Part shown: piece after piece, positions 1-63,438 of the stretch
How the letters are laid out: each line of letters starts with the position of its first letter
Numbering within the stretch: position 1 is the stretch's first letter
NCBI GenBank assembly: GCA_002269645.1
Contig: NIVC01002702.1
Span: forward strand, 62,001-126,000
Source of the DNA: Macrostomum lignano
Lineage: Eukaryota
DNA: 64,000 nucleotides
Direction: 5' to 3'
The notes under the pieces: model-generated
What the model was told of the DNA's origin: nothing
Database searches by the model: none
What the model saw: the letters and a program-made list of their open reading frames with translations, nothing else
Made by a program: the position numbers and the translations under genes

Positions 1-495
1 TAGGCACAACAACCCTATTCCGCCGCCACCCCAATCCGATAGGCACAACATTCAATTCTCCCGCCACCCCGATCCGATAGGAACGACCACCCTATTCCCC
101 CGCCAGCCCAAACTGAAAGGCACAACACCCCATTCCGTTGCCACCCCAAACAGATAGGGACCACACCCTATTCCGCCGCCAGCCCAATCCGATAGGCCCA
201 ACACCTCATTCCCCCGCCACCCCAATCCAATAGGCACAACACCCCATTCCGCCGCCACCCCAATCCAATAGGCCCAACACCTCATTCCCACGCCACCCCA
301 ATCGGATAGGCACAACACCACATTCCCCCGCCACCCCAATCCGATAGGCACAACACTCCATTCCGCCGCCACCCCAATCCGATAGGCACAACACCCCATT
401 CCGCCGCCACCCCAATCCGATAGGCACAACACCCCATTCCGCCGCCACCCCAATCCGATAGGCCCAACACCCCATTCCGCCGCCACCCCAAACCA
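1..495. repeat. ~38-bp minisatellite in GPCR intron 2
   Basis: Unit TTCCGCCGCCACCCCAATCCGATAGGCACAACACCCCA, starting about 20 bp from the exon 2 donor. Confidence 0.95.
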
Positions 496-510
496 GTTGA
501 CAAAACTCAC

Positions 511-38723: not shown

Positions 38724-41084
38724 ATGGTGTCCGAAGGCTGGCTACTGCTGGCTGTGTGCCTTCTGCATGTGCTGTCTCAAGGTAAGTGGCTTCCAAGGTA
38801 AATGCCAACATAAGCATTGTATTTTTCCTCAATAAATCACACTAGTGTTCATGCAGTAACGGAACCCATCTTAACCGGAAATTTTTGGCACAAAAGACAC
38901 ATGACACCCTTTTTCGAACGAGAACAAGCCATTGAAAATCCACGATAAACGCCCGAGCTTTAGGGAAATTACAATCAACCTGTTGTTTACAATTAGGTAC
39001 AAAATCTCCAATGCAATCGAAACTGAATTTTTTGTCTATTTGAAAAAAGATAAGCCCATTATCCAAATGCCTGACTGCAATTCACCAACATTCCTACATT
39101 CCTATGCAGCGCATTCATATCGCTACATCGGTTGCTTCGTGGACAAAGAAAAACGGGATCTCCCAGTACTGGGCGGAAGCGGCCACATGTACGCGGGTAA
39201 GTGCGACCGGCTCTGCCGCAACCGGAACTACCGCTACTTCGGTCTGCAGCACTCCAAAGAGTGCTGGTGCGGCAACAGCTACGGCAAGTATGGCGCGCGT
39301 CAGTCGAGCGAGTGCCGGATGCGCTGCAGCGGCAACCGAGGCTCCTACTGCGGCTCGAGCTGGCGCAACAGCATCTATGCAACCACCAAGCCAAGGGCCT
39401 CAAGTAATTTGGCGCTGCATGATGAATTAGCCGTTCCGTTTAGTCAGCTGATAATAATATTTCCCCTAAAAATGCACACATGCTCATATGTACACAATTT
39501 CAGCGAGGCTGCCGCTGTCCAAATGTTCGCAGCACTCCGTCGATTTTAACGGTAAATGCAGTCGAGCCATCGATGGAGACACAAATCAAAACTATAGGAA
39601 GAAATCCTGCACCCACACCCGCACTGCTACCGGAGCCTGGTGGCAGGCGAGGACCAGCAGACGCGCCAGAATCACATCCGTCAGAATCTACAACAGGCAG
39701 GACTGTTGTGCGAACCGACTCAGGAACTTTGTGATCAAGGTCGACGGTCAAGTGTGCGCGTCCTACCACTCGTCGAGTGCGTTCTCTGTGAAGACGTTCA
39801 GGTGCAACGCAGTTGGTCGCACAGTCCGCATCGAGACGAGAAATCGAGTACCGCTGACTCTGTGCGAAGTGAAAGTGTACGGACGTTATGCAGAAGATAG
39901 CAGAGGTAACCTAAGAACCCTAGTTGCTCTTTATGTGAGTCAAGTAGATTGCTGTACGCATATCGTTGCCGAACTGAGTAGCAGATGTAATTCTTCGCTT
40001 GGTATCATTATTTGTCATACATTTAGACGCTAGGTAGTGAGAAAGATCTGACTAAAATTAACGTTACGTGCTTTTATTACCAATAGAAAGGCACTGTGCA
40101 CCGGCGTTAAAAGTCCAAATAATATTTCCCCCTAAAATGCACACATGCTCAAATGTACACAATTTCAGCGAGGCTGCCGTTGTCCAAATGTTCGCAGCAC
40201 TCCGTCGATTTTAACGGTAAATGCAGTCGAGCCATCGATGGAGACACAAATCAAAACTATAGGAAGAAATCCTGCACCCACACCCGCACTGCTACCGGAG
40301 CCTGGTGGCAGGCGAGGACCAGCAGACGCGCCAGAATCACATCCGTCAGAATCTACAACAGGCAGGACTGTTGTGCGAACCGACTCAGGAACTTTGTGAT
40401 CAAGGTCGACGGTCAAGTGTGCGCGTCCTACCACTCGTCGAGTGCGTTCTCTGTGAAGACGTTCAGGTGCAACGCAGTTGGTCGCACAGTCCGCATCGAG
40501 ACGAGAAATCGAGTACCGCTGACCCTGTGCGAAGTGAAAGTGTACGGACGTTATGCAGAAGTTAGCACAGGTAACCTAAGAAATCTTTGCTCTTTATATG
40601 CTTTTAAGTAGATTTTTGTAGGCATTTCGTCACTGAAATACGAGCTAAATAATTACCACCTTAAAATCCTTTTAGCAAGTTGAGTTTCTGTCGTTTTGAT
40701 ATTTTAGCCGAAGAACCGAATCTTTATAGCTTCAGTTTAGTGTATTTTTCTAGCTTATTATTACATTGTTGATAATCTAAAGCCTTTTGCATCTGATATC
40801 GCACTGTTACAGAATTTCTTGGCTGTTATCCGGACGACTCGGAGTTCCCAGACTTCATCGTCGCCAAGGTGTCTGCCCTCATGACCGTGTGGAAGTGCAA
40901 CAAAATCTGCAAGGCCAAGAAGTTTTCCTACTTCGGCGTTAAGAATGGCCAAATCTGCGGCTGCGGCAATGAGTACGGAAACAGCGGCGACACTGTCAAG
41001 GCCAACTGCAACGTGGCTTGCGGCGGCAACCCGGACGAGAAGTGCGGCGGGAGCACCAACAATAGCGTCTTTGAAGTGAAGTGA
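38724..41084 (+). CDS. Secreted lectin-like protein: signal peptide-WSC-FTP(F-type lectin)-FTP-WSC, ~475 aa. Exons 38724-38781, 39110-39403, 39504-39905, 40169-40570, 40813-41084
   Basis: Signal peptide MVSEGWLLLAVCLLHVLSQ; WSC YIGCFVD..C..C....YFGLQ...CWCGN..C...C.G...CG..W.NSIY; FTP AIDG.T..SCTHT..WWQ..V.IYNRQDCCANRL..LTLCEVKVYG (twice); second WSC in the last exon; all introns phase 1 GT-AG; total 1428 nt in frame. Confidence 0.9.
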
Positions 41085-43439: not shown

Positions 43440-43605
43440 TTTAATGGTATATTTTACCATGGTTTTAGAGGTAGACATGGTTACATAGATTGTGTCGTCT
43501 ATGGTTTTAGAGGTAGACAATGGTAGATTGTGTCTATGGTTTAGACGTAGGACATGGTAGATTGTGTCTACGGTTTTAGGGGTAGACATGATAGATTGTG
43601 TCTAT
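43440..43605. repeat. ~34-bp tandem repeat that is the target of the RTE insertion (resumes at 45042-45072)
   Basis: ATGGTTTTAGAGGTAGACATGGTAGATTGTGTCT on both sides of the LINE. Confidence 0.85.
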
Positions 43606-45044
43606 TGGTGTCCTGGCGGGAGGCCCCGCGCCCCGCGAGTGGACCCAGGCCAACATCGTCGGCATCCCGAAGAAGCCGGGCACTACACGGAAGGAGGAGC
43701 ATCGTGGAATCTCGCTCATGTCCTGTACCGCGAAGCTGTTCAACCGGGTGCTATTAGCACGGTTACAGCCCGTGCTGGACTCGTTCCTGCGGTACGAGCA
43801 GAACGGGTTCCGCCCCCATCGCGGTACGGTGACGCAGATCCTGGCCCTCCGCCGCATCATCGAGGAGGCACGCATCCACCAGTCAAGCCTTATCGTCATC
43901 TTTGTTGACTTCCTCAAGGCCTTCGACTCGGTGGCGCGCGGCGCGCTGCCTCACGTGCTCCGTGCCTACAACGTACCGCAGCAGCTGATCTCCGCCATCA
44001 TGGCGCTGTATCAGGACACCACCGCCGCGGTAGCGACGCCAGACGGACCGTCGGACCTGTTTAGCACGACCTCCGGAGTGCTACAGGGTGACACTCTGGC
44101 GCCCTTTCTCTTCGTGCTGGTGATGGACTGGGTGCTCAGGACCGGCCTGCCGACATCAGAGGACGGCTTTCTGCTGCAAAGGCGCACCAGTAGACGGCAC
44201 CCGGAGAAGAAACTGTCTGTCCTTGGCTACGCGGCCCTGCTGTCTTCCACGGCCGAAGGCGCCCAACGGCTGCTGGACGGCCTGACTGCGGCGGCGGCGA
44301 GGGTCGGTCTCGTCATCAACGCCAGGAAGACCGAGGTGCTGACGGTGCCGCATGATCTACCCGCCGAGATTCGACTTCGAGACGGCGACGGCCCCGGGAC
44401 GGCGCTCCCGAAGTGCCTTCAGTTCGTCTACCTCGGCGGACTGGTGCCGGACGTCGGTGACGACCTAGCGAGACGGCGCGGCAAGGCCTGGGCTGCCTTC
44501 CGATCTGTGCGGGCGGTGCTGCTCTCCGAGGCCCTGTCCGACGGCGCCAGGTCCCAGCTGTTCCAGGCGGTTGTTGAGACCGCCCTGCTGTACAATGCTG
44601 AGACCTGGACGCTGACCGGGGCGCTTGAGGCGCAGCTCGACGCGGCGCATGCGGCCCTAGTCCGCGCCGCTTTCGGCGCCCGCCGCGGCCCTGGCAGCGA
44701 GACAACCGAGTCCCTGTACAAACGCACAGGCCTGACGCGGCCTTCTGCCCTGCTGAGTCAGCGGCGCCTGCGGCTTGCCGGACATGTCATCCGGGCCGAA
44801 GCCTACTGCCCAGAACCGCTGCAGGACGTCCTGCTGTGGACCCCGCAGGGACCGCGCAGGCGTGGTCAGGGACGATCAGCCCGCTACGTCGACCGCCTTT
44901 TTGAAGATGCGCGAGCACCCAGCCAGACGGCCGGTGTGAAGCACATTAGAGACCTGGCTCTGAAACGCGCGATTTGACGCTCCCCCCTCTTGGCCACTCC
45001 CGTGGCTGGCGTGGGGCGTAACTATTATTATTATTATTATTATT
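43606..45044 (+). mobile_element. 5'-truncated RTE-clade non-LTR retrotransposon (RT domain through 3' end)
   Basis: HRGISLMSCTAKLFNRVLL..RYEQNGFRPHRGT..FVDFLKAFDSV..GVLQGDTLAPFLF..GLVINARKTE..F.YLGG..LLYNAETW..RRLRLAGHV; stop 44977; short 3' UTR hairpin and (TAT)n tail; ATTGTGTCTAT at both junctions (43595-43605, 45042-45052). Confidence 0.93.
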
Positions 45045-46247
45045 GTGTCTATGGTTTTAGAGGTAGACATAGCTATAATGAAATGGACATCCAATGCACT
45101 GCTACTTTTGCGTATGCATACTACTCCACGGAATAATTTCATTTGACTCGAGACGTAGAGAGCTTTAGTGGAAATTTAAAAGTCGCATAATCTAAGAAAC
45201 AATCAAGCCGAGAAACTGCGATTTTACGTTTTTGTAACAATTCTTCTTAGGCCTATGTTAATCTATTCAGTAACGATTAACGAATCCAGTGGGAGGCGTC
45301 CTAGTCCTGTCCCAACTCTTTTGCCGTGGCTGTACTTGCATATAATAAGCTGACATCGTAATTTTGGGCTTATTTTGGGCCACTCAAAATGCTGAGCCAG
45401 TCCACCGAGCCGACTTACGACCGAGTACCGACCGCCCCTACTTTAAAAATCCTGGACCTGCCTGTAAATCCATATGTGTTAGCTTATCTTTTACTTTTTA
45501 AATTGTGCTGTCTAAGTAAATGACAGCACAATGACAGCACAATGAAAATGATAGCACAGCACTAAGTTTTAAGTGTAGAACTAATCTGCATTGCCATTAG
45601 TTTTATTTAGATGTATACTAATACTATATAATAGAGCCATGAGTATGGAAACTATGTATATAGCAGAAACAAATATTCTAATTTGTTAGAATATTTGTTT
45701 TTGTTAGACCTTTATCACTTAATGGCTGATTCACTGGACTTAGGCATCAAGTGGTAACCCTTAGGCCCCCTATTCTCTTATTATAATACAGAATTGCTAA
45801 TTGTAGCTTTTCAATATTTCTAGCTTGAATAATTAATTAATTAAATGTAATCTTTCTTTTCATTTTATAGGCTACCTTAGCTTAAGCATAGGCCTACCCT
45901 AAGCCTAAAAGCATTTCTTTACTAGGCAGTAAATGCATTCTAGATTCTAAATTATTTTTCCTTTCTAAAAGATAATGATATATATTATTTTTTGGCCTAT
46001 CCTTACACTAGATATCACATAGAATATCCTAGAGATTATTGTTTATAGAAAGAAATTTAGAGAGAAATTTTTTATATTAAGTTTGTTTTTTTTTAGCTAT
46101 TTTATAAATGATTAATTATTATCTTATTAATGAACTATATAGTATACCTTTAAATATAAGATTATTTATTTGAGGAAAATATTTAGCTTCTCTATTTACC
46201 AATCATGATATAATTTATAATATATTAAATTGTTTTCAGACTATAAA

Positions 46248-49200
46248 ATGATGGTTGTTCTAAATAGCTCAATATTGGATTTTTTCTTAGCTTTTTCCAC
46301 ATTGTTAGCTGCATGCATTTTTACTACTGGATTCTTTCCTGATGTTGGAAAATCATCTTACTCTGTTTGTGGCCAAAGTAGAATAAGAGGTAATATATTT
46401 TCAACCTTGTTAGCAAGCAGCTTTTCTACTGTAGGACCTTGGCAGAGGTTAGCACACAACCTTGGCAGAGGGTAGCACACAACCTTGGTAGAGGGTAGCA
46501 CACAACCTTGGCAGAGGGTATCACACAACCTTGGCAGAGGGTAGCACTCAACCTTGGCAGAGGGTAGCACACAATCTTGGCAGAGGTTAGCACACAACCT
46601 TGGCAGAGGGTAGCACACAACCTTGGCAGAGGGTAGCACTCAACCTTGGCAGAGGGTAGCACACAACCTTGGCAGAGGGTAGCACTCAACCTTGGCAGAG
46701 GGTAGGACTCAACCTTGGCAGAGGGTAGCACTCAACCTTGGCAGAGGGTAGCACACAACCTTGGCAGAGGGTAGCACACAACCTTGGCAGAGGGTAGCAC
46801 ACAACCTTGGCAGAGGGTAGCACACAACCTTGGCAGAGGGTAGCACACAACCTTGGCAGAGGGTAGGACTCAACCTTGGCAAAGGGTAGCACTGGACCTT
46901 GGGAGGGTAGCACTCGACCTTGGGAGGGTAGCACTCGACCTTGGGAGGGTAGCACTCGACCTTGGGAGGGTAGCACTCGACCTTGGGAGGGTGGCACTCG
47001 ACCTTGGGAGGGTAGCACTCGACCTTGGGAGGGTAGCACTCGACCTTGGGAGGGTAGCACTCGACCTTGGGAGAGTAGCACTCGACATTGGGAGGGTAGC
47101 ACTCGACCTTGGGAGGGTAGCACTCGACCTTGGGAGGGTAGCACTCGACCTTGGGAGGGTAGCACTCGACCTTGGGAGGGTAGCACTCGACCTTGGGAGG
47201 GTAGCACTCGACCTTGGGAGAGTAGCACTCGACATTGGGAGGGCAGCACTCGACTTACGGAGGGTGGCACTCGACCTTGGGAGGGTAGCACTCGACCTTG
47301 GGAGGGCAGCACTCGACTTACGGAGGGTGGCACTCGACCTTGGGAGGGTAGCACTCGACCTTGGGAGGGTAGCACTCGACCTTGGGAGGGTAGCACTCGA
47401 CCTTGGGAGGGTAGCACTCGACATTGGGAGGGTAGCACTCGACCTTGGGAGGGTAGCACTCGACCTTGGGAGGGTAGCACCCCCACTCTATAGTAGCAAT
47501 GTTGGAGATTCTGCATACACATGGTGAACTCAGTTCTACTAATTAACGGACGCAGATTTACAAATGAGCAATCAAAATAATCATTATTTGTCCTCTGACT
47601 GGCATTTAGACAGACGATGTTTCGGTCGTAAAACTGTCCTACTATTGATTGATGGCATGCGACAGGACATGGTTTTCTCATCTGATAGACAATCTGCTGC
47701 TAAAATGCGCTTTCTGGACAGTGCCAGGAGAGGCAAAAGCAGAATTGCTGGCATTCGCGGCAATTATAGCGCTGTGGTGAAAGTTCAGTCGCCTACTGTT
47801 ACTCTGCCTAGGATTAAGGTAGGCTGAGATCTCTTATCTCTGTCCTACACAATTCACCTTCCTCGCTTTCTCCTGTCTTTCTCTTCCCCATATTTCTCTT
47901 TCCCATCTTTCTCTTCCCTTTTTCTCTCCACTCTTTCTCTTCACTCTTTCTTTTCACACCTTTCTCTTCCCATCTTTCTCTTTCCTCTTTCTCTTTCCCA
48001 TCTTTCTCTTTACCATCTTTCTCTTTCCCATCTTCTCTTTCCCATCTTTCTCTTTCCCATCTTTCTCTTCCCCTCTTTCTCTTCCCTCTTTCTTTTTCCC
48101 ATCTTTCTCTTCTCCTCTTTCTCCTTCCCATCTTTCTCTTTACCATCTTTCTCTTTCCTCTTTCTCATTCCCATATTTCTCTTCCCTCTTTTTTTGTTTC
48201 TCTTGCTTATTTCTCTTCCCTCTTTATCTATCCCATCTTTCTCTTCTCTTTCTCTTCCCTCTTTCTCTTTTCCCTCTTTCTCTTTTCCATCTTTCTCTTC
48301 TCTTTCTCTTCCCTTTCTTCTTTACCCCTTGCCCTTTCCTTCTCCTTTTGCCTTCTCCCTCTCACCAATCCACCTTGCCTACTTCGCAGTGCCTCACAAC
48401 CGGTCGAGTTCCGGGATTCCTGGACGTTTTGTGGAATTTCTTCGCTTCCGAATTGGCCACGGATAGCATTGTGCGTCGTTGGCATTCGGCCAATTTCAGC
48501 GTTCAGTTCTATGGGGACGACACCTGGACCCGGATGTTCCTGGGTAGCTTTGCCATGGCGCAAGGGCTGCCATCCTTCTTTGCTACGGACTTCTACGAGG
48601 TGAGGAATTGGCTTTTGATGACTTTATCATTCTGTGCCAGTCTTCTATAAATCCTCTGAACATTTTCATTTTGAGCCACCCAGAGATCCCATATTGAGTC
48701 ACTCAGATCTCATATTGAGTCACTCAGATATCCCACATTGAGTCACCCTGAGATCCCATGTTCAGTCATTTAAAAATCCCATATTGAGTCACTCAGATCC
48801 CATATTCAGTCACCCAGAGATCCCATATTGAGTCACTCAGATCCCATATTCAGTCACCCATTGATCCCATATTGAGTCACTCAAAGATCCCATAATGAGT
48901 CATCCTGAGATCCCATATTGAGTCGCTTCTCATTGATCCCATATTGAGTCACTCAGATCCCATATTCAGTCACCCAGAGATCCCATATTGAGTCACTCAG
49001 AGATCCCATATTAATTCACTTCCCATTGATCCCATATTGAGTCACTCAGATACGCCCCAAAAAGTATTCATTTTTCCTAATTCTCACCCTGTCTCACCCA
49101 CAAACTCTTAACACTTTGCACCATTCTAAACTATTAATAATTATCCGATCGCACTACTAAATTTTGCAGGTAGACAAAAATGTGACAGAAAATTTGCGAG

Positions 49201-52200
49201 AAGCGCTGAACGCTACATCAAGCTGGGATGTGCTCATCTTGCACTACCTCGGACTGGATCACATCGGCCATATTGAAGGCCCAAATAGTAGATTGGTGCC
49301 GGATAAACTTGCGGAAATGGATGCGGTTGTTGAGTCTATTGTTACGGCTTTGAGTAGCCAGGTAGGTGCTTGTGTGTGATGGGAAATCTGTGGGGGTAGT
49401 GACTGATTATGGGATCTCTGAGTGACTCAATATGGGATCTCTGAGTGACTCAATATGGGATCTCTGAGTGACTCAATATGGGATCTCTGAGTGACTCAAT
49501 ATGGGATCTCTGAGTGACTCAATATGGGATCTCTGAGTGACTCAATATGGGATCTCTGAGTGACTCAATATAGGATCATTGGGAAGTGACTCAATATGGG
49601 ATCAATGGGCAGTGACTCACAATGGGATACTTAAATCAAGTGACTCACAAGAAGCCGCTCCCAACCAAACCATCTCTTCAGCCAGTCGACTGGCTCCTAG
49701 TGGTAACCAGCGATCACGGAATGAGCGACCTTGGCGGTCACGGAGGTGCCTCCCCCGCCGAGACGCGAACTCCTCTCGTGTTGCTAAGCAGTGTACAGCT
49801 TTCCAGCAGTCTAGATCCATCGATTGAGCTCCCAGAACTAGAGCAGACAGATATGGCTAATTTGCTAACTAGCTGGACAGGTGTTCAGCCTCCCAGGGCC
49901 AGTTTGGGACTGCTGCATCCGTCACTAGGCGGACTCGCCTGCGGCGGCTTCTCCAACTCGTTGCTTAGCAACAACTGGCTCGATTTGTTGGAATTAGAAG
50001 CCGAATTGAATTCTAAATCTGGTGAGAGTTTTTTGTTTGATTACTTTACTACTCTCTAACTGCTAAGTAACTGCACTACTGATAATAAAGAAATCACAAT
50101 TTTTCTTTATTTAAAAAAAACTATAAATTAGAGGCCTTCAATCGCTCCGAACGATCCAAGCGCTGCGCCGAAGATCTAAACTATTGCTACTCTGAGGCCA
50201 GACAAGCTCAACAGGCTTTGGTTTACGCATCGGCTGAGTACAGCTTGCCTAGAATGCTCATTGGTTTAGGGCTGGGCTGCCTCTGCTGTCTTTTTCGTTT
50301 GCCAACTTTGCTGCAAGCTGTTGGTATGATGACAGCAAAATCTAACGGCCCAAATGAATTCCAATCAGCCGACGACAGGGTTAGCTATTTTTATTGTTTG
50401 TTCTTAATGTACGCCCACCCCATCCTCCACAGCCACCCCATCCTCCACAGCCACCCCATCCTCCACAGCCACCCCATCCTCCACAGCCACCCCATCCTCC
50501 ACAGCCACCCCATCCTCCACAGCCACCCCATCCTCCACAGCCACCCCATCCTCCACAGCCACCCCATCCTCCACAGCCACCCCATCCTCCACAGCCACCC
50601 CATCCTCCACAGCCACCCATCCTCTACATCCACCCCATCCTTCGCAGCCACCCCATCCTCCGCAGCCACCCCATCCTCCGCACGCACCCAATCATCCTTC
50701 ACATACTATGCTTCGACTTCATACCGAGCACAAAGCGCCAAATTTCATATAAATTGCCCAAAATTGTTCCAGCTAAACAACCTGGCGATCTACCTGCTAA
50801 TTCTGGGCACCTGTCTAGCTCCGATATTAATTCACGCGTCTACTAGTTTAATAGAGGAGGAGCATCAGTTTTGGTACTTTGCTTGCACCAGCCTGTTTGC
50901 CTGTCGCGTCCTATCAGCCAGTCTAAGCACTGCTAATTTACCTTGGCTGGAATGTATTCGTCAACTGATTCAACCCCTGATTCCTCTTGTAGCATTTCGA
51001 TTAGCTAGAAATTTCAATCAAACCGGAGACAAATGGGCCCACCTACCAGATCTAGATCAGCACCTGCGCGGTTGGCCTGTCTGTTACGCAATAATTCTCC
51101 TCTGTAGCATCTGTTTAATTGGTGTTTTTCTGCAAAAATACCTTGATTATAACAATACATTTTCAAACGATACTACTTATACTATAGTTGCAAATAGTAG
51201 TAAAATTCGATGCCTAATTTTAATTGCATGCTGTTTTTGCGCTATTTGGCTTCGTTGTAGTTTGGCATTGACAAATTTTATTAATCCTATAATTAGCTGT
51301 TTGGGATTGCTATTGGCTATAGCATGGACTGTTATTGGGATTATTACTAATGCTAATTATGGCTGCCCAGTTGCCTCATCAGCTGGTGGCATTCTACTAT
51401 GCCAGACTTTGTTGGCAAGTTGTCCGGCCAACTGTGCAGTCCTTTGTCTGCACTGCCTAGCCATTGGACCAGCGTTTGCTAAACCAGGACTTTACAGTTC
51501 GAGGCGTGATAGACTCATTCTGATGCTCACCTTTGTTTGGCTGGGTCAGGCTCTCTACTTTCAGTTGGTAAGTCTGCACTTTTTTATCGTTGTTGAGTTT
51601 TATGCTTGAAAAATCAATATAGGGTTTTGGCCGCCCCCCCCCCTGGCACAGGTCCTTCAGTGACATCAACGGGGCGCTTGCAAAATCCCGAAATTTTGCA
51701 ATTCAGAAATTTCATAAACCCAAAATTTCATAAACCCGAAATTTCATAAAACCCGAAATTTCATAAACATCGAAACATAAAATATCGGCATAATTCATAG
51801 AACCGAAATTTCACGTCAAATTGTACGATATTGAAATGAACTGGATGAATAAAAATAAGACTAAACTGAGAATTAAAATAAATTAAGCACTTCATATTTC
51901 TAGAATCTTTTTATTCCTTTACTTTTACAAAGTCGTCTCGGATGTGCAACTTTTGGCTAGGAAAGAAACTGTCTTTCGACATTTTGAAAATTCGGGTTTT
52001 GTGAAACCCGAATCCGTCTCACAGCACCAGCGATGAGGCAATTCTGTCCATACTGTACGCAGACGCAATAATAATAAAAATAATTGATTACACCTGCCCC
52101 GATTGGGCCAGATGTGCAACCGACAGCTCAGCCGCAGCTATTGCGCGGCGCATCTGAAGGCTGCGTACGGCTGTTCAGTCCAAAGACTGGGGGGTCAACA

Positions 52201-52664
52201 CACAGCCTCAATTACCCCATCAATTACCCCATAATAAACAGAATTTTCCGCGTTACGATAAAATGAAAATATGTACCGTCCAATTTCAGGGCCAGTCAAA
52301 CAGTCTCGCAACGGCCGATATTGGCGCATCATTTGTTGGCCTGCCGTTTAATTCGATGATTTTAAGCGGCGCTTTGCTCGTCCTGTCAACTTGGACTGGC
52401 CAATTGTTTTATCTATTGCTTGCAATTCTGCTTCTAAAAGGGCATAAAAGCATCTGTACTGGTGGAGAGTTCAGACGAGCATCATCTGTGATTGGTCTGG
52501 CGCACCTATTGGCAGGTTACAGCTGGTGCAGCCTGGCGCTATTCTGCATTGTACAGCGGCATCATCTGTTTGTATGGACAGTGTACGCACCCAAGTACTG
52601 CTATGGCTCCGCTTACCTGGCTCTGCTAACTGTGCTGTATCTTGTTGCGCGGCTTTTCGATTGA
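46248..52664 (+). CDS. PIGG: GPI ethanolamine phosphate transferase 2 (PIG-G/GPI7), ~836 aa. Exons 46248-46389, 47610-47818, 48390-48599, 49170-49361, 49682-50021, 50132-50379, 50773-51567, 52290-52664
   Basis: N-terminal TM ending GFFP; LLIDGMR; SPTVTLPRIK|CLTTGRVPGFLDV; FYGDDTW; VDKNVT..LHYLGLDHIGH; SDHGMS..GGHGG; EEEHQFWY; GQSNSLATAD; QRHHLFVWTVYAPK. Splice phases are consistent (2511 nt). The exon 6/7 boundary is the least certain. Confidence 0.9.
46435..47480. repeat. Bipartite minisatellite in PIGG intron 1: 23-bp units, then 21-bp units
   Basis: (AACCTTGGCAGAGGGTAGCACAC)n to ~46880, then (GACCTTGGGAGGGTAGCACTC)n. Confidence 0.96.
47860..48365. repeat. CT-rich low-complexity repeat in PIGG intron 2
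   Basis: TTTCTCTTTCCCATC-like units. Confidence 0.92.
48670..49050 (+). repeat. 21-23-bp minisatellite in PIGG intron 3
   Basis: ATCCCATATTGAGTCACTCAG(AG) units. Confidence 0.93.
49385..49635 (-). repeat. 23-bp minisatellite in PIGG intron 4; reverse complement of the intron 3 array
   Basis: (TATGGGATCTCTGAGTGACTCAA)n is the reverse complement of TTGAGTCACTCAGAGATCCCATA. Confidence 0.95.
50415..50700. repeat. 18-bp minisatellite in predicted PIGG intron 6
   Basis: (CACCCCATCCTCCACAGC)n. Confidence 0.95.
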
Positions 52665-52894
52665 TTTGAAATCCAAGTTACATGTAGGCAGTTTCTGTTC
52701 TTTTTGAAAAAAACTTTGGTGCTCCTAGCAAACTGACAAAAAGATGACTATAGCTCAGCTAAATTTATTTGCATTTACTTTTTTCCCTTCTCCTTTTTTT
52801 CTTAATATAAATTACACCTATTAGTACTGTTCTAAGTAATAAACAGTTTTTTTTGCGATTTATACTTTCAATTATAAAAAATAACTAAAAACAA

Positions 52895-53355
52895 GGGTAG
52901 AGAGGATTGAACTGGCAGGCCAATTATTATCAGGGGAGTGACGGGGTTGAACTAGCGAGCCAATTATTATCAGGGGAGTGATGGGGTTGAACTAGCGAGC
53001 CAATTACTATCAGGGGAGTGAGGGGGTTGAACTAGCGAGCCAATTATTATTAGGGGAGTGACGGGGTTGAACTAGCGAGCCAATTATTATCAGGGGAGTG
53101 AGGGGGTTGAACTGGCAGGCCAATTATTATCAGGGGAGTGAGGGGGTTGAACTGGCAGGCCAATTATTATCAGGGGAGTGAGGGGGTTGAACTGGCAGGC
53201 CAATTATTATCAGGGGAGTGAGGGGGTTGAACTGGCAGGCCAATTATTATCAGGGGAGTGAGGGGGTTGAACTGGCAGGCCAATTATTATCAGGGGAGTG
53301 AGGGGGTTGAACTGGCAGGCCAATTATTATCCGGGGAGTGAGGGGGTTGAACTGG
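52895..53355. repeat. 40-bp minisatellite (~11 copies) between PIGG and AP5M1
   Basis: AGGGGGTTGAACTGGCAGGCCAATTATTATCAGGGGAGTG. Confidence 0.96.
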
Positions 53356-53396
53356 TTTCTATTTCTATCACTAACACATTTTCTTAATTTCTTCAG

Positions 53397-54125
53397 TCTG
53401 TGCTGTGCCTGGGTCTGTTCCGCCTGCGTGACACTGGCGGCAGTTTTTCCGGTCAGCCGGTGCTACTGCACCGGTTCTCGGCAACGTCGACCAGCCTGGC
53501 CGGTTTACCGGCCGCCATGGATCAGAAAGAGTTAACAGCCTGCATTGTCAGAGCGCTGGGCTTGGCCTATCCAACAGAATCGTTTGTGCCCGAGCGAGAC
53601 TCCTGCCGATTGTCTCCGACAAAGCCAGTGTTCTCAGTGCCCGTGCCGGGCGGGGTACTCCGGCCGTTGCTAGTCACCGAGCATAGTCCGCCAGGCGCGT
53701 TGCTATGGTGCCTTGGCAACGAGGATCATGAAGACGCCGTGATGGACGCGTTCGCTTTGCTTGAAGCTGTTGGCGAGTTTCTCGGCCCTCTGTCGAAGGA
53801 TTTCGGCCCGGAGGAGCCGCGGCTGGCCGAGCTGCAGTTGTTCCTGTCCTATGCCTGTCCTTTCGGCACCCCGCTGGCTCTGGAGCAGCCTCTCTATCGG
53901 CACCTGTTCGGCCAGGTGCCAAGCCTGCCGGCGGCGGGCAGCAGAGAGGCGGCAGAGTCGCCGCACACAGTCTGGACTGTGGGAGCGCCCGCCGAAAAGA
54001 AGTCGAAGAAGGTCAGGATAGGAGCGGGGATCAAAGTAGCTCAGCGGCTACTGCGTCTTAGTTTTGTGCCGCTGGAGTGCCTGGGCTCGATTCCATGCGC
54101 GACTACATGAGTAATGGGCCACTTA

Positions 54126-54170
<45 letters not shown>

Positions 54171-55789
54171 GGTATTATGGGAGCTGAGTTTAAAATCTGT
54201 TTATTTCTCAATCTCCAACGCAGGGTTCCTCCGTGGCCCTGCAGTTGACAGAGCGGGTCTATTATTCTTGCCAGGACGAGAATTCCTGTCATTCGCGGCA
54301 GGGCGATAATTACCTGTGCTTCGGGTGTCTCACCTGCGACGCGTCGTTGTTAAAGGTGAGAATTGAGAAAAGAGGATGAAGGTGAGGGTGAGAGGGTGAG
54401 GATAAGGGTGAGAGCGAGAGTAAGGGTGAGAGTGAGGGTGAGTGAGAGTGAGGGTGAGAGTGAGGGTGAGGGTGAGTGAGAGTGAGGGTGAGAGTGAGGG
54501 TGAGAGTGAGGGTGAGGGTTAGTGAGAGTGAGGGTGAGAGTTAGGGTGAGTGAGAGTGAGGGTAAGAGTGAGGGTGAGTGAGAGTGACGGTGAGGGTGAG
54601 AGTGAGAGTGAGGGTGAGGGTGAGTGAGGGTGAGAGTGAGGGTTAGAGTGAGTGAGAGTGAGGGTGAGAGTTAAGGTGACGATGAAGATGAGGGTGAGGG
54701 TGAGGATGAGGGTGAGAGTGAGGGTGAGGGTGAGTGACAGTGAGGATGAGGGTGAGGGTGAGAGGGAGGATGAGGGTTAGGGTGAGGGTGAGGGTGAGGG
54801 TGAGAGGGAGGATGAGGGTGAGGGTGAGGGTGAGGGTGAAGCGGTGAAAGTGAGGGGGTGAGGGACCGAGGGTGAGGGTGGGGTTCATTGTCAGCAGTGT
54901 ATCAGTCGCCATACTGCATGCATACTAACTAAAATCTTCTCAAACCCCGCAATCGCAGGAGAACTGCAGTTTAGAAATTCGCCTAGACAGTCCGCGTCAA
55001 CTGTTGCACGGAGTCCTGGTGACGCCCCGCTGCGCCTACTGGGACGCCACGCCTCAGTCGGCTCGGATCCGGCTGCAGCCGCCTCGCCAGGCTGGCAGTC
55101 GTTTGATCACCTACTGGCTGGCGCAGCCGTTGCATCCGCTTGTCACAGGTTTCTACCAGGTGAGACTGCAGCAGCAGCAACAACAGCAGCAACAGCAGCA
55201 GCAACCATCGCACATGCGCCAGTCTGCTGCTGTCAGGCTTCAGTTAATATTTTCCGACATTCTGTGTCGCGGCGCGGCCAAATGCGACTATTGCGAGGTG
55301 CACTTGCACCTGCCAGCTTGGGCTCCGCAGCCGCGGGATGCTAAATTGACTTGCAGCTTAGGCACAGCCTCGCTCACGCAGCAGCAGCAGCAGGCTTCTC
55401 CTTCTGGTCGGATTTTAGTCTGGAATTTGACCGCCGGAATGGCAAAACTGTCCCCGGGTACACCGGTGAACCTCGTTGGCACCGTCAGCTTCGTCAGGAC
55501 GGGCGCTGCCGCCGCTCCGGCAGGCGATTCCATGCGCGACGACATGACCTGCTGCGCTAGGCTGTACTTCCGGTTCTCTCGCGTTGCACTGTCCGACGCC
55601 AAAGTCGATGCTCAGTTTGTCGGTCTTAGCGCCGGCCCGGCGCCGAAATCCTCGCCCTCCGTGTCTCTAGCCGTCGAATCCGGCGATTGCGCCGTCTGGA
55701 ATTCCTTCGGCGACGCGCCGATTTCCTACCGACCGGAGGATCGACTGCTGAACACTGCCGCCGGATTTGAATTGCACAGCGCGTCGTGA
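53397..55789 (+). CDS. AP5M1: AP-5 complex subunit mu-1 (MUDENG), ~525 aa. Exons 53397-54011, 54224-54355, 54959-55789; no genomic ATG at the 5' end
   Basis: Motifs matching AP5M1 as recalled: FVPERDSC (human FVESRDSC), ACPFGTPL (ACPFGTLL), V.LQLTERV, GCLTCD, GFYQ, YCEVHL, LVWNL, VWNSFGDAP (IWNSKAPAP); phase-0 GT-AG introns. Confidence 0.85.
54126..54171. repeat. (GACA)n microsatellite in AP5M1 intron 1
   Basis: Direct reading. Confidence 0.95.
54375..54875. repeat. (GAGGGT/GAGAGT)n repeat in AP5M1 intron 2
   Basis: Direct reading. Confidence 0.95.
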
Positions 55790-60480: not shown

Positions 60481-63438
60481 TTACACGAGGTGGCCCAACC
60501 GTGGTTTAACACAATTTTTTCGGCGCTGAACTGCGCTTCTAAACCCACTATTTAAATATCCGCGGATGGTACGGGGATCGGATGCAAGTGGACATGCCGC
60601 AATCTTTAAATACTTAGACGCGATTTCGTTGACTGAACGTTCGATTAGAGAGCTGATGGGCGGGAGGCACCAATCGATCTTCGTTCGCAACTGCAAGGCT
60701 TTATTTTTTTGCCTTCCCATAATGCGTTGGCTACGCATTACGCCGTAGAAACTTTCAGCAATTGCCTCCCCACCACCTGTGTTCAGTGCAACGTCAAGAA
60801 GAATGCACACAGCTCGACCAGCTTCTTCAAAGACTGGTTGAACTGTGTATAATTGTTTTATAAGTGCTGCCTCATCCAGAATACAGTTGTCATAACAGCG
60901 TACATCAGTTTCAACTTTAAAAACCTGCTGGAGGCGCGAATTCTCTTCAATTTTTATGGAATTAATGATTTGGCCCTTAATTGGCTTTTTTGACTTGGAA
61001 CATACAAGGCACTGTATCCCATACGGAGCAAGGTGACCCCAAAAGAGGGATTCAATAACATTCTTGTACTTTACATGTACGTAGCTATGGTTTCCAAGTA
61101 TCAGTTCTGAAAATAATTCGTCTGATTCAGCCACCTCAGAAATATATGGGAGTGAAACCACATAATTAAAAAACGAACAAAACTCTGGCTCACCAGCCTC
61201 CATGAAGCCAGAAAAGTTTATGCACTGCCGAATAGGCTTGGCTGTACCATTGGAAGCAGTTTCACGGGAACCACATAAAAGGTATAGTAGCTGCTCAAAG
61301 TCCATAAACTTGGCTAAGATATTTGAGCATGCTGAGGTTCCCTTATTTAATCGATTAGCCACACTTTGACGGAGAGAGCTGGAAACGACTTCGACCTCTC
61401 TGACTGCATCATTAGTTGTTCTCTCCTCCCAAAGGTATACTTTCTTCTTATTACACCTCCGACGTCTTCCTCGACTACTTTCTGCTTCTTGCCCGACATA
61501 TTCTTCGCCAATTACATGCCAGCCCTCTAGAAGCCGCACCTTCTTAAAGCTCATACCTTCAATGTCAGCTCGGTGCTTGTCATATAATGGACGACACTTT
61601 CTATCCATCATTTGTAGAAGGCGATTCCCCCATGAAACAATTTTCCAGTGATTGAATTGCAATCCCTGGGCCAGCTCCATCATTTCAACTAGTGGTTGAA
61701 ACACATCTAGTAGCAGACACAGATCGGTAGCAAAGTCTGCTCCCAAAACCCTATATTGGAGGGGAAAGTCTTCATCTTCATCGTGAATGCGACGAAAAGT
61801 TGTTGCATACAGACTGTAAGCTCTTTCAATTTTGACCCACTGCTTAACAGATGAGCTTGTAAATCGCTGTGTTGCATATGGTATTGGTACAGACACTTTT
61901 TCCTTCATTTTGGACGCCACTTTTGACATTAAAGTATGGTTTTTGCCCCTTCCCATTAAATGGTTAAACTCGTTGGCCCTTTCAATAAACAATGTTAAGC
62001 AATCTGCCGCAGGTTTACCGTACTTTGACTCGCGAACATCTAACACCGCTAAATTAAGTAAGTGCGATACATCCCATATTACAGGTTGAAATGTAGAACT
62101 GTCCGCGATATTGCTACGCCCTGACAAGCGGGTTATTTCATTTGCAAACATTGCCGGTTGATACTGGCCATCAGCTGCTGTACCACAATACCGCAAGAGG
62201 TCCTTTTCCCCCAGTTTTAATTCATCTTGAATCGTGCGAAAGATAAGCTGCGCTAGCTCAGCCAGACTCCCCCAGTAACTACTACGCGATCTAAGTCCTG
62301 ACTCGTGCTTGTGTCAGAATCTGATTCATTCGATTCACCAGAATCAGAAACATCACTATTTACTGAAGCACTGGAGTTCTCCTCGCAGACGTCTTCATTT
62401 TGTACAAAATAAACACATGGGGCACCAACTGGGAATGCGACTCTTTCCCCTCGGCTTATAGTTGCAAGCAAGATAGCCTGGTTTGTCTCGCGGGTCTGTG
62501 TCGCTTTATCAACAATTCCCATGAAATGTGGAGGGAGACCTGTAGACTCCAATGGCGTCAAAAGAAGCTTCCGGTTTTCATCATTGATCCATTCGTTAGC
62601 TGCATTAATAATAATTGAAAGCTGTTTTCTTCCGTGCCCCCGATTTCCAATTTGACAGCCATTGAGTTCTAGAAAAGTTACTTGATTTTCATAGTGTACA
62701 GCACCAGCCTTGGATCTAATAGTTTGGATTGCTGAGCGGACTAAGCGTTTAGCAATTTCGTGAGATAGTTTGTCTTCTTCTGCTTGATCCTTTTGTTTTT
62801 TTACAGAGAGCGCATGCTGCCGTCCCTGTGAATTATTTGATGACCCTAAAAGATGCCCTCGCAGTTTGCTCTTGAAATTTCGCCAAAACTGTGTATCTTT
62901 CTTATTAGAAGTCCCTTTTATAATCAACTCAGTTTCGCTGGGATTCATGTAAACACCTGTGCCCAATGTGCAATTATCACTATAGTGACGAGACACTTGA
63001 AAAACAGACATTTTACTCAGCTTTCGAGTATCTAAAGCTTCCCAGCATGTTTTACACCTTACTACAGAGTGTCCATCTTCTTCATTCAAAAATAATTCTA
63101 TGTCTGGGACTTCCCGCGCTACGTCTACAATAGAGTTTAGCGTCATCCACTTCTCCAAGTCCAATACAAACTCGCTGTTAGTTACACTTGCGCTGTGACT
63201 TCGATTGGAATTCTCAGATGGCTTACCTAATGTCTCAAAGGCAAAGGCGAGTTTTCTTTCAACTATATCTCCTATCATACTAGGCAGTTTTTTAACAAGA
63301 TCGGAAAATGCATTGGCACAGTCACCAGCACAGGATGGGTTTATTACACCAGAGTTTGTTGGTGGTAGAGTAGTACTTTTTCGCGATCAGCCTCAGAACG
63401 AGTCTTCTTTGCCTGAGGTGCCTCAGTATCGCTAGAAG
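60481..63438 (-). pseudogene. hAT-like transposase, ~980 codons once two 1-nt frameshifts are repaired
   Basis: Adding one base in the C5 run (62269-62273) joins ..VVTGG to SLAELAQLIF..LLRYCGTAADG. Adding one base in the T5 run (63377-63381) joins SSDTEAPQAKKTRSEADREK to STTLPP..PSMIG. Acceptor at 63439. Confidence 0.75.

What the first reader, a model, noticed from the sequence alone, without database searches (positions are those of the whole stretch)
53385..53520. AP5M1 start codon may be donated by the trans-spliced leader
Seen: the AP5M1 frame is closed by TAA at 53385 and opens exactly in phase 0 after a strong acceptor (TTTTCTTAATTTCTTCAG|TCT GTG CTG TGC). The first in-frame ATG (53517) is 40 codons downstream. 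The three ATGs between the PIGG stop and this acceptor hit stops with no usable phase-0 donor. Those 40 codons (SVLCLGLFRL..PVLLHRFS) resemble the conserved AP5M1 N-terminus (human MAQRAVWLI..VRFSRRY). Established: flatworm spliced leaders end in AUG, which can act as the initiator. Inference: SL-AUG + TCT gives M-S-V-L-C, a gene that depends on trans-splicing for its start codon.
Basis: partly seen in the sequence, partly recalled or inferred. Interest (0 to 1): 0.8.

Follow-up and report, generated by a model that had tools for sequence, protein, structure and literature searches.

The report
Flatworm AP5M1 start codon from spliced leader
In this Macrostomum lignano flatworm genome piece, the AP-5 adaptor mu gene has no start codon of its own ahead of its first 40 codons, so it probably gets its AUG from the trans-spliced leader RNA, a mechanism already known in flatworms and not confirmed here with RNA data.

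Summary
The window is Macrostomum lignano DNA. The sequence observation is correct. An in-frame TAA (53385) lies inside a branch-point/polypyrimidine/CAG acceptor. The AP5M1 frame opens at 53397 in phase 0, and the first genomic in-frame ATG is 40 codons later (53517). The three upstream ATGs are dead ends. An open, in-phase frame alone is unremarkable (about 1 in 5 by chance). The protein is a divergent AP-5 mu subunit: 147 bits against a profile of 14 orthologues, and best sequence and fold match to human AP5M1 (8yab_E). Evidence that the 40 codons are coding is moderate. The length before the first alignable residue matches orthologues (42 vs 45). A Met-anchored alignment beats shuffles (p about 0.005-0.016). 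AlphaFold predicts the first two longin-domain strands there even with orthologue N-termini masked. No other N-terminal exon and no ATG|GTRAG donor exists in the 53 kb upstream. Against it: local profile search finds no homology in the 40 codons, the internal ATG sits in a perfect Kozak context, and I could reach no RNA evidence. The M. lignano leader ends in ATG. The gene lies operon-like about 80 non-repeat bases after PIGG. Leader-donated initiation is the best explanation (about 0.6). It would be a new example of a known mechanism (Cheng et al. 2006).

The parts
52263..52664 (+). Last coding exon of the upstream gene PIGG (GPI ethanolamine-phosphate transferase), with stop TGA at 52662-52664
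   Evidence: Pfam PF19316 PIGO_PIGG, E 8.7e-16, profile positions 295-402 of 423. Stop read.
52838..52843 (+). AATAAA, the only canonical poly(A) signal between the PIGG stop and the AP5M1 acceptor; likely 3' end of the PIGG mRNA
   Evidence: Pattern scan. Its function is inferred.
52900..53355 (+). Tandem repeat of 40 bp x 11.4 copies (95% matches) that fills most of the PIGG-AP5M1 spacer (the putative outron or intercistronic region)
   Evidence: Tandem Repeats Finder. After subtracting it, about 80 nt of non-repeat spacer remain. This is close to the ~100 bp mode of repeat-adjusted intergenic distances in M. lignano operons (PMC8629364).
53371..53375 (+). CTAAC branch-point-like motif, 21-25 nt upstream of the acceptor AG
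   Evidence: Read directly. Its function is inferred.
53379..53396 (+). Polypyrimidine tract plus CAG acceptor (TTTTCTTAATTTCTTCAG). It contains the in-frame stop TAA at 53385-53387.
   Evidence: It is the only AG between 53300 and 53530 with a pyrimidine-rich upstream tract (0.82 against 0.59 or less). It matches [T/C]TNCAG, the motif enriched at M. lignano trans-splice acceptors.
53397..53516 (+). Forty codons (SVLCLGLFRLRDTGGSFSGQPVLLHRFSATSTSLAGLPAA) with no genomic start codon. Proposed to encode strands beta1-beta2 of the longin-like domain after a leader-donated Met.
   Evidence: Translation. Collinearity with orthologues. Anchored alignment p 0.005-0.016. AlphaFold strands E5-13 and E18-27 with pLDDT 75/75/68 when orthologue N-termini are masked. 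Codon usage favours frame 0 only weakly.
53517..53519 (+). First genomic in-frame ATG (residue 42 of the proposed protein), in a GCCGCCATGG context. It is the rival or additional initiation site.
   Evidence: Detectable local homology to orthologues begins at residue 43.
53397..54011 (+). AP5M1 exon 1 (205 codons), ending at donor AAG|GTCAGG
   Evidence: tblastn of the UniRef M. lignano fragment P0001. Splice sites read.
54224..54355 (+). AP5M1 exon 2 (44 codons), acceptor CGCAG|, donor AAG|GTGAGA
54959..55789 (+). AP5M1 exon 3 (mu-homology domain, contains a run of 12 Gln), with stop TGA at 55787-55789
   Evidence: The orthologue HMM aligns through to residue 510. Fold match to the 8yab_E mu-homology domain.

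Best explanation
The locus is the Macrostomum lignano AP5M1 gene. It encodes the mu subunit of the AP-5 adaptor complex and lies on the same strand just downstream of PIGG, in an operon-like arrangement. I propose that the pre-mRNA is processed by spliced-leader trans-splicing at the CAG acceptor ending at 53396. The 35-nt leader (CGGTCTCTTACTGCGAAGACTCAATTTATTGCATG) would then be joined directly to TCT at 53397, and its 3'-terminal AUG would become the initiator of a 526-residue protein beginning M-S-V-L-C-L-G-L-F. The 40 codons that have no genomic ATG would encode the first two beta strands of the N-terminal longin-like domain. A complete AP5M1 would therefore depend on trans-splicing. Shown here: the sequence anatomy, the gene identity, the collinearity with orthologues, the fold prediction, and the absence of an alternative start or exon in the window. 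Taken from the literature: the leader sequence, the frequency of trans-splicing in this species, and the ability of flatworm leader AUGs to initiate translation. Inferred and untested: that a leader is actually joined at 53397, and that ribosomes start at its AUG. That AUG has a weak context (U at -3, U at +4), while the next AUG (53517) has an optimal context. Some leaky scanning to a truncated isoform is therefore plausible.
For: Organism: exon 1 is 100% identical to a UniRef M. lignano protein fragment. Gene identity: the best PDB sequence hit is AP-5 mu-1, 8yab_E. An exhaustive phmmer search found 21 hits of about 475-570 aa, and the ones looked up are named AP-5 complex subunit mu-1; one of them is 2.6e-230 to human AP5M1. 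A profile built from orthologues only gives 147 bits, E 3e-47. The Foldseek best hit is 8yab_E at 1e-20. Start-codon problem: there is an in-frame TAA at 53385 and no in-frame ATG before 53517; the upstream ATGs are dead ends. Acceptor: only 53397 has a pyrimidine tract and a CTAAC branch motif, and it matches [T/C]TNCAG. Collinearity: the orthologue HMM aligns node 46 to residue 43, so 42 residues precede it against 45 in orthologues. Most of the aligned orthologues start M-S-[LIV], as does M+SVL. Starting at 53517 would delete about 41 of the roughly 70 residues before the conserved RDSC anchor. Anchored alignment to orthologue N-termini beats shuffles: 31/2000 for 41 aa and 9/2000 for the first 30 aa. 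Frame +1 and the reversed sequence score like shuffles. Structure: strands E3-10 and E23-28 are predicted with the full alignment. With orthologue N-termini removed, a hairpin E5-13/E18-27 is still predicted, pLDDT 75/75/68, domain pTM 0.76. That domain model best matches AP5 mu over 174 of 175 columns, E 5e-7, TMq 0.67. No alternative: a six-frame search of the whole window with the N-terminal profile finds nothing below E = 1. No ATG|GT[AG]AG exists on the + strand in the 53.4 kb upstream. Context: the leader ends in ATG, 30% of genes are trans-spliced, and operon spacers peak near 100 bp after repeat subtraction. Here about 80 nt remain once the 456-bp repeat is removed. Precedent: Cheng et al. 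2006, as cited. Wiberg et al. 2023 call the terminal ATG of the Macrostomum leader a translation start codon.
Against: No transcript, 5'-end or leader-read evidence could be obtained (supplements). An open frame in phase 0 has about a 0.2 chance probability, and frame +1 is open as well. Local profile searches detect no homology in the 40 codons, although this segment is among the best conserved in other lineages (leave-one-out scores 48-79 against -1.9 here). Detectable homology starts exactly after the internal Met. The internal ATG has a textbook GCCGCCATGG context, whereas the leader AUG context is poor (with the leader sequence). Codon-usage support for frame 0 is marginal. AlphaFold predictions of a hydrophobic hairpin are suggestive rather than proof.
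Confidence: 0.6

Rival explanations
1. Translation of the functional protein starts at the genomic ATG 53517. The 120 nt from 53397 to 53516 are a 5' UTR, trans-spliced or not, that happens to be open and in phase. M. lignano AP5M1 has then lost, or never needed, strands beta1-beta2. If the mRNA is trans-spliced, the weak-context leader AUG is mostly bypassed by leaky scanning.
For: The ATG has a perfect Kozak context, GCCGCCATGG. Local homology to orthologues begins at residue 43, immediately after this Met. The 40 codons have no significant local profile match. Open and in phase is about a 0.2 chance event, and frame +1 is also open. Codon bias is only marginally in favour of frame 0.
Against: It would remove about 41 of the roughly 70 residues that precede the RDSC anchor; the 14 orthologues aligned keep these residues, and 11 of them keep the anchor itself. 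That includes two of the five strands of the longin-like sheet, while the rest of the domain is well kept (147 bits). It does not explain the length match (42 vs 45), the M-S start, the anchored-alignment signal, or the confident hairpin predicted without alignment support. If a leader is joined at 53397, the first AUG met by a scanning ribosome is the leader's, and it is in frame.
Confidence: 0.22
2. A cis-spliced upstream exon, outside or far upstream in the window, carries the ATG and is spliced to the 53397 acceptor in phase 0. That exon would end exactly in ATG or encode extra residues.
For: 53397 is a good generic acceptor, and genome sequence alone cannot tell cis from trans use. Weak ATG|GTA and ATG|GTG sites exist 5.9 kb or more upstream.
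Against: No phase-0 donor follows any ATG in the 730-nt spacer. No ATG|GT[AG]AG occurs on the + strand in the 53.4 kb upstream. No exon resembling an AP5M1 N-terminus exists anywhere in the window. With a single added Met the protein is already collinear with orthologues, which leaves no room for extra coding sequence. Any such exon would have to lie inside or beyond the same-strand PIGG gene.
Confidence: 0.1
3. Non-AUG initiation occurs on an un-trans-spliced transcript, at GTG 53400 or CTG 53403, the second and third codons after the acceptor.
For: Near-cognate codons are present at codons 2 and 3 of the open frame.
Against: Near-cognate initiation is usually inefficient (general knowledge). 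Such a transcript would carry the upstream ATGs at 52744 and 52981 as decoys. This rival offers no explanation for the strong acceptor placed exactly at the frame opening.
Confidence: 0.03

Closest known systems
Flatworm mRNAs whose initiator methionine is the 3'-terminal AUG of the spliced leader (Cheng, Cohen, Ndegwa and Davis 2006, J Biol Chem 281:733; called 'slORFs' in PMC9851317)
   Same: The organism's leader ends in AUG. The acceptor sits directly at the first codon after Met, in phase. There is no genomic in-frame AUG upstream of N-terminal residues that correspond in position to orthologues.
   Different: No RNA or translation evidence exists for this gene. The N-terminal residues are much less conserved than in the textbook cases. 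A strong-context internal AUG 41 codons downstream could give a second isoform. This example is in a free-living macrostomorph. Papers on this genus call the leader's ATG a start codon (PMC10468722), but I found no gene-level catalogue.
AP-5 adaptor complex mu subunit (human AP5M1, PDB 8yab chain E)
   Same: Same two-domain architecture: an N-terminal longin-like domain and a C-terminal mu-homology domain. It is the best sequence and fold match, and the two are collinear from residue 1 to about residue 510.
   Different: The flatworm protein is very divergent: 25% identity or less, no Pfam PF00928 hit even at E = 10, a run of 12 Gln and other insertions, and an N-terminal hairpin with almost no sequence similarity.
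Downstream genes of M. lignano operons (Ustyantsev and Berezikov 2021, PMC8629364)
   Same: It follows a same-strand neighbour (PIGG). The repeat-adjusted spacer of about 80 nt is near the ~100 bp mode. The acceptor matches the trans-splice motif.
   Different: Operon membership is defined there by mapped leader reads, which I could not check. The raw spacer (about 540 nt from the poly(A) signal) is mostly one 40-bp tandem repeat.

Membership tests
Leader-AUG-initiated ORF (Cheng et al. 2006 class / slORF) | The organism's spliced leader ends in AUG | tested here: met
   The window is M. lignano. The published leader is CGGTCTCTTACTGCGAAGACTCAATTTATTGCATG (PMC8629364). No leader RNA gene lies in the window itself.
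Leader-AUG-initiated ORF (Cheng et al. 2006 class / slORF) | A leader is actually trans-spliced at the acceptor that opens the ORF (RNA evidence) | not testable with these tools
   There is only sequence-level support: a branch motif, a pyrimidine tract, CAG, and a match to [T/C]TNCAG. No transcript was found. Supplements do not list the gene.
Leader-AUG-initiated ORF (Cheng et al. 2006 class / slORF) | The leader AUG is in frame with the main ORF, with no intervening stop | tested here: met
   ATG plus the sequence from 53397 reads through 238 codons of unspliced exon 1, and 526 codons after splicing. The chance expectation is about 0.2.
Leader-AUG-initiated ORF (Cheng et al. 2006 class / slORF) | No genomic in-frame AUG upstream of residues that belong to the protein | tested here: met
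   An in-frame TAA lies at 53385 and the first ATG at 53517. There is no upstream exon or ATG-ending donor.
Leader-AUG-initiated ORF (Cheng et al. 2006 class / slORF) | Residues between the leader AUG and the first genomic AUG are homologous to orthologue N-termini | tested here: inconclusive
   The length is collinear and the start is M-S. Anchored alignment gives p 0.005-0.016. The fold prediction agrees. The local HMM is not significant.
Leader-AUG-initiated ORF (Cheng et al. 2006 class / slORF) | Translation initiates at the leader AUG | not testable with these tools
   This needs ribosome profiling, N-terminal proteomics or reporter assays.
AP-5 complex mu subunit (AP5M1) | Best and specific sequence similarity to AP5M1 orthologues over the full length | tested here: met
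   147 bits, E 3e-47, against a profile of 14 orthologues, covering residues 43-510. The hits looked up are named AP-5 mu-1. 8yab_E is the only relevant PDB hit.
AP-5 complex mu subunit (AP5M1) | N-terminal longin-like domain plus C-terminal mu-homology domain fold | tested here: met
   The AlphaFold model has pTM 0.60 and its best Foldseek hit is 8yab_E at 1e-20, followed by AP-1, AP-2, AP-3 and AP-4 mu chains. The N-terminal domain alone best matches 8yab_E.
AP-5 complex mu subunit (AP5M1) | Match to Pfam Adap_comp_sub (PF00928) | tested here: not met
   No Pfam hit even at E = 10. The closest homologue, P0002, does carry PF00928. I read this as divergence, not as evidence against membership.
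M. lignano operon, downstream gene | Same-strand adjacent genes with a repeat-adjusted spacer under 1 kb | tested here: met
   The PIGG stop is at 52664, AATAAA at 52838 and the acceptor at 53397. A repeat occupies 456 nt of the spacer. The criterion is from PMC8629364.
M. lignano operon, downstream gene | The downstream gene carries mapped leader reads | not testable with these tools
   No access to the M. lignano leader-read tracks or RNA-seq.

The most novel reading that the evidence does not exclude
M. lignano AP5M1 depends obligately on trans-splicing for its initiator, having lost its own ATG after becoming the downstream gene of a PIGG-AP5M1 operon. The weak-context leader AUG followed by an optimal-context internal AUG (GCCGCCATGG, 41 codons downstream) makes it a dual-initiation gene. 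One product would be a complete mu subunit. The other would be an N-terminally truncated form lacking longin strands 1-2. The ratio of the two would be set by trans-splicing and leaky scanning.
Probability: 0.15. Interest if true: 0.45.

Novelty: new member of a known kind. Interest (0 to 1): 0.3.

Why it matters
If confirmed, this is a clean gene-level example, in a transgenic model flatworm, of a conserved housekeeping protein that cannot be made complete without trans-splicing. The practical consequences concern annotation. Gene finders that require a genomic ATG will truncate or fragment such genes. The only public protein for this locus is a 203-aa fragment named as an inositol phosphatase. 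Pipelines that trim the leader, including its ATG, will miscall the start. The case also gives a simple, testable rule for finding more: an in-frame stop inside the acceptor tract, the ORF opening in phase 0, and collinearity with orthologues. It does not reveal a new mechanism.

Tried and rejected
Several searches and tests gave nothing or too little to use.

1. Transcript evidence. An exact look-up of the UniRef fragment P0001 found no record. A scan of metagenome contigs for the first 26 nt of the exon found nothing, as expected for that collection.

2. Literature supplements. The supplements of four M. lignano papers were searched for AP5M1 and PIGG, and neither gene is listed.

3. Closer relatives.
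   - The word-indexed protein search with the orthologue alignment was swamped, probably by the poly-Gln run, and returned only P0001.
   - The same search with the closest homologue P0002 returned only itself.
   - The contig of P0002 (L001) lacks the N-terminal exon and shares no synteny with the window.
   - The Logan transcript of P0007 (L002) has an ordinary genomic-type 5' UTR and its own ATG, and comes from an unidentified organism.

4. Pfam gave no hit on the protein.

5. Codon-usage scoring with about 1,000 training codons from the window favours frame 0, but the margins are too small to count. GC3 is uninformative because all three codon positions are G+C rich.

6. I prepared a shuffled N-terminus as an AlphaFold control and dropped it. 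The random shuffle happened to be strand-like. I used masking of the orthologue N-termini as the control instead.

7. Pseudogene was rejected: three exons with canonical splice sites give an uninterrupted 526-codon frame that scores 147 bits.

Full report
**What is there**

The window is Macrostomum lignano genomic DNA. Exon 1 of the gene in question is 100% identical to a UniRef protein fragment from that species. Three exons with canonical splice sites form an uninterrupted reading frame of 525 codons that begins without an ATG:
- exon 1, 53397-54011
- exon 2, 54224-54355
- exon 3, 54959-55789, ending in TGA

- An in-frame TAA sits at 53385-53387, inside the tract TTTTCTTAATTTCTTCAG.
- The AG is at 53395-53396, and a CTAAC branch-type motif lies at 53371-53375.
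- The frame opens with TCT GTG CTG TGC at 53397.
- The first in-frame ATG is at 53517, 40 codons downstream.
- The three + strand ATGs between the PIGG stop (52662-52664) and the acceptor give ORFs of 1, 26 and 4 codons. None has a phase-0 GT donor.

Among the nine AG dinucleotides between 53300 and 53530, only the one ending at 53396 has a pyrimidine-rich upstream tract (0.82 against 0.59 or less).

**Is it more than chance?**

The open, in-phase frame by itself is not. The 120 nt are 66% G+C. Between 50% and 64% of shuffled or Markov-simulated versions have frame 0 open, and frame +1 is also open. "Phase 0 and open" therefore has a probability near 0.2. The case rests on other evidence.

**Gene identity**

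- The best PDB sequence match is human AP-5 mu-1, 8yab_E, E 0.0016, with query residues 115-507 aligned to 128-486.
- An exhaustive phmmer search of 1.84 billion representative proteins gave 21 hits. The full-length ones are about 450-570 aa. Those looked up are named AP-5 complex subunit mu-1 in sea urchins, amphioxus, a sea cucumber, Nematostella, a snail and a sponge. Unnamed relatives came from a choanoflagellate and a protist.
- One hit is 2.6e-230 to human AP5M1.
- A profile built only from 14 orthologues scores the flatworm protein at 147 bits, E 3e-47.
- An AlphaFold model (pTM 0.60) has 8yab_E as its best Foldseek hit (1e-20), followed by the mu chains of AP-1 to AP-4.
- Pfam finds nothing even at E = 10. 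This reflects strong divergence.

The upstream same-strand gene is PIGG (PF19316).

**Are the 40 codons coding? Evidence for**

1. Collinearity. The orthologue profile aligns node 46 to residue 43 of the Met-plus-model protein. So 42 residues precede the first alignable position, against 45 in orthologues. The conserved RDSC anchor falls at residues 68-71 against 72-75 in human. Most of the aligned orthologues begin M-S-[LIV]-R-G-[LIV]-W, and the flatworm protein with a donated Met begins M-S-V-L-C-L-G-L-F. A start at 53517 would delete about 41 of these roughly 70 residues.
2. Anchored alignment. A Met-anchored global alignment to the profile of orthologue N-termini beats composition-preserving shuffles: z = 2.6, 31 of 2000 as good. 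For the first 30 residues, 9 of 2000 are as good. The frame +1 peptide and the reversed sequence score like shuffles.
3. Structure. With the full alignment, AlphaFold places strands at residues 3-10 and 23-28 and helix 1 at residues 44-54. As a control I removed residues 1 to about 45 from every orthologue, so that no alignment information covered the segment (A2). A hairpin (E5-13, E18-27) is still predicted, with pLDDT 75, 75 and 68 for the first three blocks of ten residues and a domain pTM of 0.76. That domain model best matches AP5 mu over 174 of 175 columns (E 5e-7, TMq 0.67) and then AP5 sigma and other longin-type adaptor subunits.
4. No alternative exon or donor. A six-frame search of the entire 64-kb window with the N-terminal profile finds nothing below E = 1. 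No ATG followed by the species' consensus donor GT[AG]AG exists on the + strand in the 53.4 kb upstream.

**Are the 40 codons coding? Evidence against**

- Local profile searches see no homology in the 40 codons. The N-terminal profile gives -0.2 bits, and 421 of 5000 shuffles do as well. Against the full-length profile the segment gives no reported score.
- This segment is one of the best conserved in other lineages. Leave-one-out scores are 48-79, against -1.9 for the flatworm sequence.
- Four other 40-residue segments of the undisputed coding sequence clearly fail the same local test (48-85 of 300 shuffles as good), and a fifth is borderline (11 of 300). Failing it is therefore not decisive.
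- Detectable homology begins exactly after the internal Met.
- The internal ATG lies in GCCGCCATGG, the optimal vertebrate-type context. The leader AUG would sit in UUGCAUGU, with U at -3 and U at +4.
- Codon usage favours frame 0 only marginally.

**Where would the start codon come from?**

M. lignano has a single 35-nt spliced leader ending in ATG. About 30% of its genes are trans-spliced. The motif enriched at trans-acceptors is [T/C]TNCAG, and CTTCAG at 53391-53396 matches it (PMC8629364).

Operon spacers in this species peak near 100 bp once repeats are subtracted, and under 1 kb is the published operon criterion. Here the PIGG poly(A) signal is at 52838 and the acceptor ends at 53396. 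A 40-bp x 11.4 tandem repeat (52900-53355) takes up 456 nt of the spacer, which leaves about 80 nt. This is the expected geometry for a trans-spliced downstream gene.

Flatworm leader AUGs can act as initiator methionines, an established result of Cheng et al. 2006 (J Biol Chem 281:733). I could not read that paper itself, but it is cited for this point in PMC9851317, PMC12582326, PMC5832876 and PMC7653826. The Macrostomum genome paper calls the leader's final ATG a translation start codon (PMC10468722).

**Most likely mechanism**

The leader is joined at 53397, and its AUG starts a 526-residue AP5M1 whose first 41 residues form strands 1-2 of the longin-like domain. I put this at about 0.6. 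The main uncertainty is the complete lack of RNA evidence available to me (supplements).

The rivals are:
- initiation at 53517, with the 120 nt as a UTR or a dispensable extension (about 0.22)
- a distant cis exon that donates the ATG (about 0.1)
- near-cognate initiation at GTG 53400 or CTG 53403 (about 0.03)

Because the leader AUG context is weak and the next AUG is optimal, both starts may be used. This is the most novel reading still open.

**Comparison with what is known, and novelty**

The locus works like the leader-AUG-initiated mRNAs of Cheng et al. 2006. On the sequence-level criteria it qualifies: the leader ends in AUG, the acceptor is in phase, there is no intervening stop, and there is no genomic AUG. 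The two criteria that need RNA or protein data are untested, and the N-terminal conservation criterion is inconclusive. It is at most a new member of a known kind.

Its practical value is for annotation. The only public protein for this locus (P0001) is a 203-residue internal fragment named "Type I inositol 3,4-bisphosphate 4-phosphatase", which is wrong for this sequence.

**Verdict**

Interest is modest (0.3).

Noticed in passing
window 53742-55165 (protein P0001): The only database protein for this locus is a 203-aa internal fragment (residues 116-318 of the model). UniRef names it 'Type I inositol 3,4-bisphosphate 4-phosphatase'. The sequence is AP5M1, so the name looks like a misannotation and the model is truncated at both ends.
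   Followed up: partly
window 52900-53355: A 40-bp tandem repeat (GAGGGGGTTGAACTGGCAGGCCAATTATTATCAGGGGAGT, 11.4 copies, 95% matches) fills most of the PIGG-AP5M1 spacer and ends 41 nt before the acceptor. This fits the published remark that repeats inflate operon spacers in M. lignano. I do not know whether it has any role in processing.
   Followed up: no
window 54012-54223 and 54356-54958: Both AP5M1 introns are largely simple repeats. Intron 1 holds (AGAC)x11.5 at 54126-54171. Intron 2 is almost entirely an imperfect GAGGGT hexamer array, about 87 copies at 54372-54884.
   Followed up: no
window 55168-55205: A run of 12 glutamines (CAG/CAA) is encoded inside the mu-homology domain of AP5M1, with a second Q5 run further on. 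Both are insertions relative to orthologues and have low model confidence. The poly-Q probably swamped one word-indexed protein search.
   Followed up: partly
window 53508-53520: The first genomic in-frame ATG of AP5M1 lies in a perfect GCCGCCATGG context, in contrast to the weak context of the leader AUG. This raises the possibility of dual initiation.
   Followed up: partly
window 50415-50697: An 18-bp tandem repeat (15.8 copies, 95% matches) lies inside a long PIGG-region ORF and would encode (HPILHS)n if it is exonic. I did not determine whether it is coding or intronic.
   Followed up: no
window about 46400-47530: A long minisatellite, read as GRVLPSQ-type 7-residue repeats in several frames on both strands. 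It lies between an ORF carrying a PIGG-like N-terminal 'TTGFFP' segment (about 46230-46370) and an ORF carrying 'VLLLIDGMRQD' (about 47600). It is probably a repeat-filled first intron of PIGG. This rests on ORF translations and my recollection of PIGG motifs only.
   Followed up: no
window 43598-44977 (+): An ORF with a reverse-transcriptase domain (PF00078, E 4.9e-26), that is, a retroelement a few kb upstream of PIGG.
   Followed up: no
window 60481-62196 and 62253-63278 (-): Two long intron-less ORFs of 571 and 341 aa lie on the minus strand with no Pfam match. They may be a transposon-derived or lineage-specific gene.
   Followed up: no
window 206-1093 (-) and 38932-40033 (+): Other genes in the window: a rhodopsin-family GPCR fragment (PF00001, E 3e-20), and a gene with WSC and F5/8 type C (discoidin-like) domains.
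   Followed up: no
L001 1537-1680: L001 is the contig of the closest homologue P0002 (ENA ERZ25070786, organism unknown). There the next same-strand gene starts 139 nt after the AP5M1-like stop, with its ATG directly after a ...TTGTCAG acceptor-like site. This layout resembles an operon with trans-splicing. None of the other genes on that contig match the window.
   Followed up: partly
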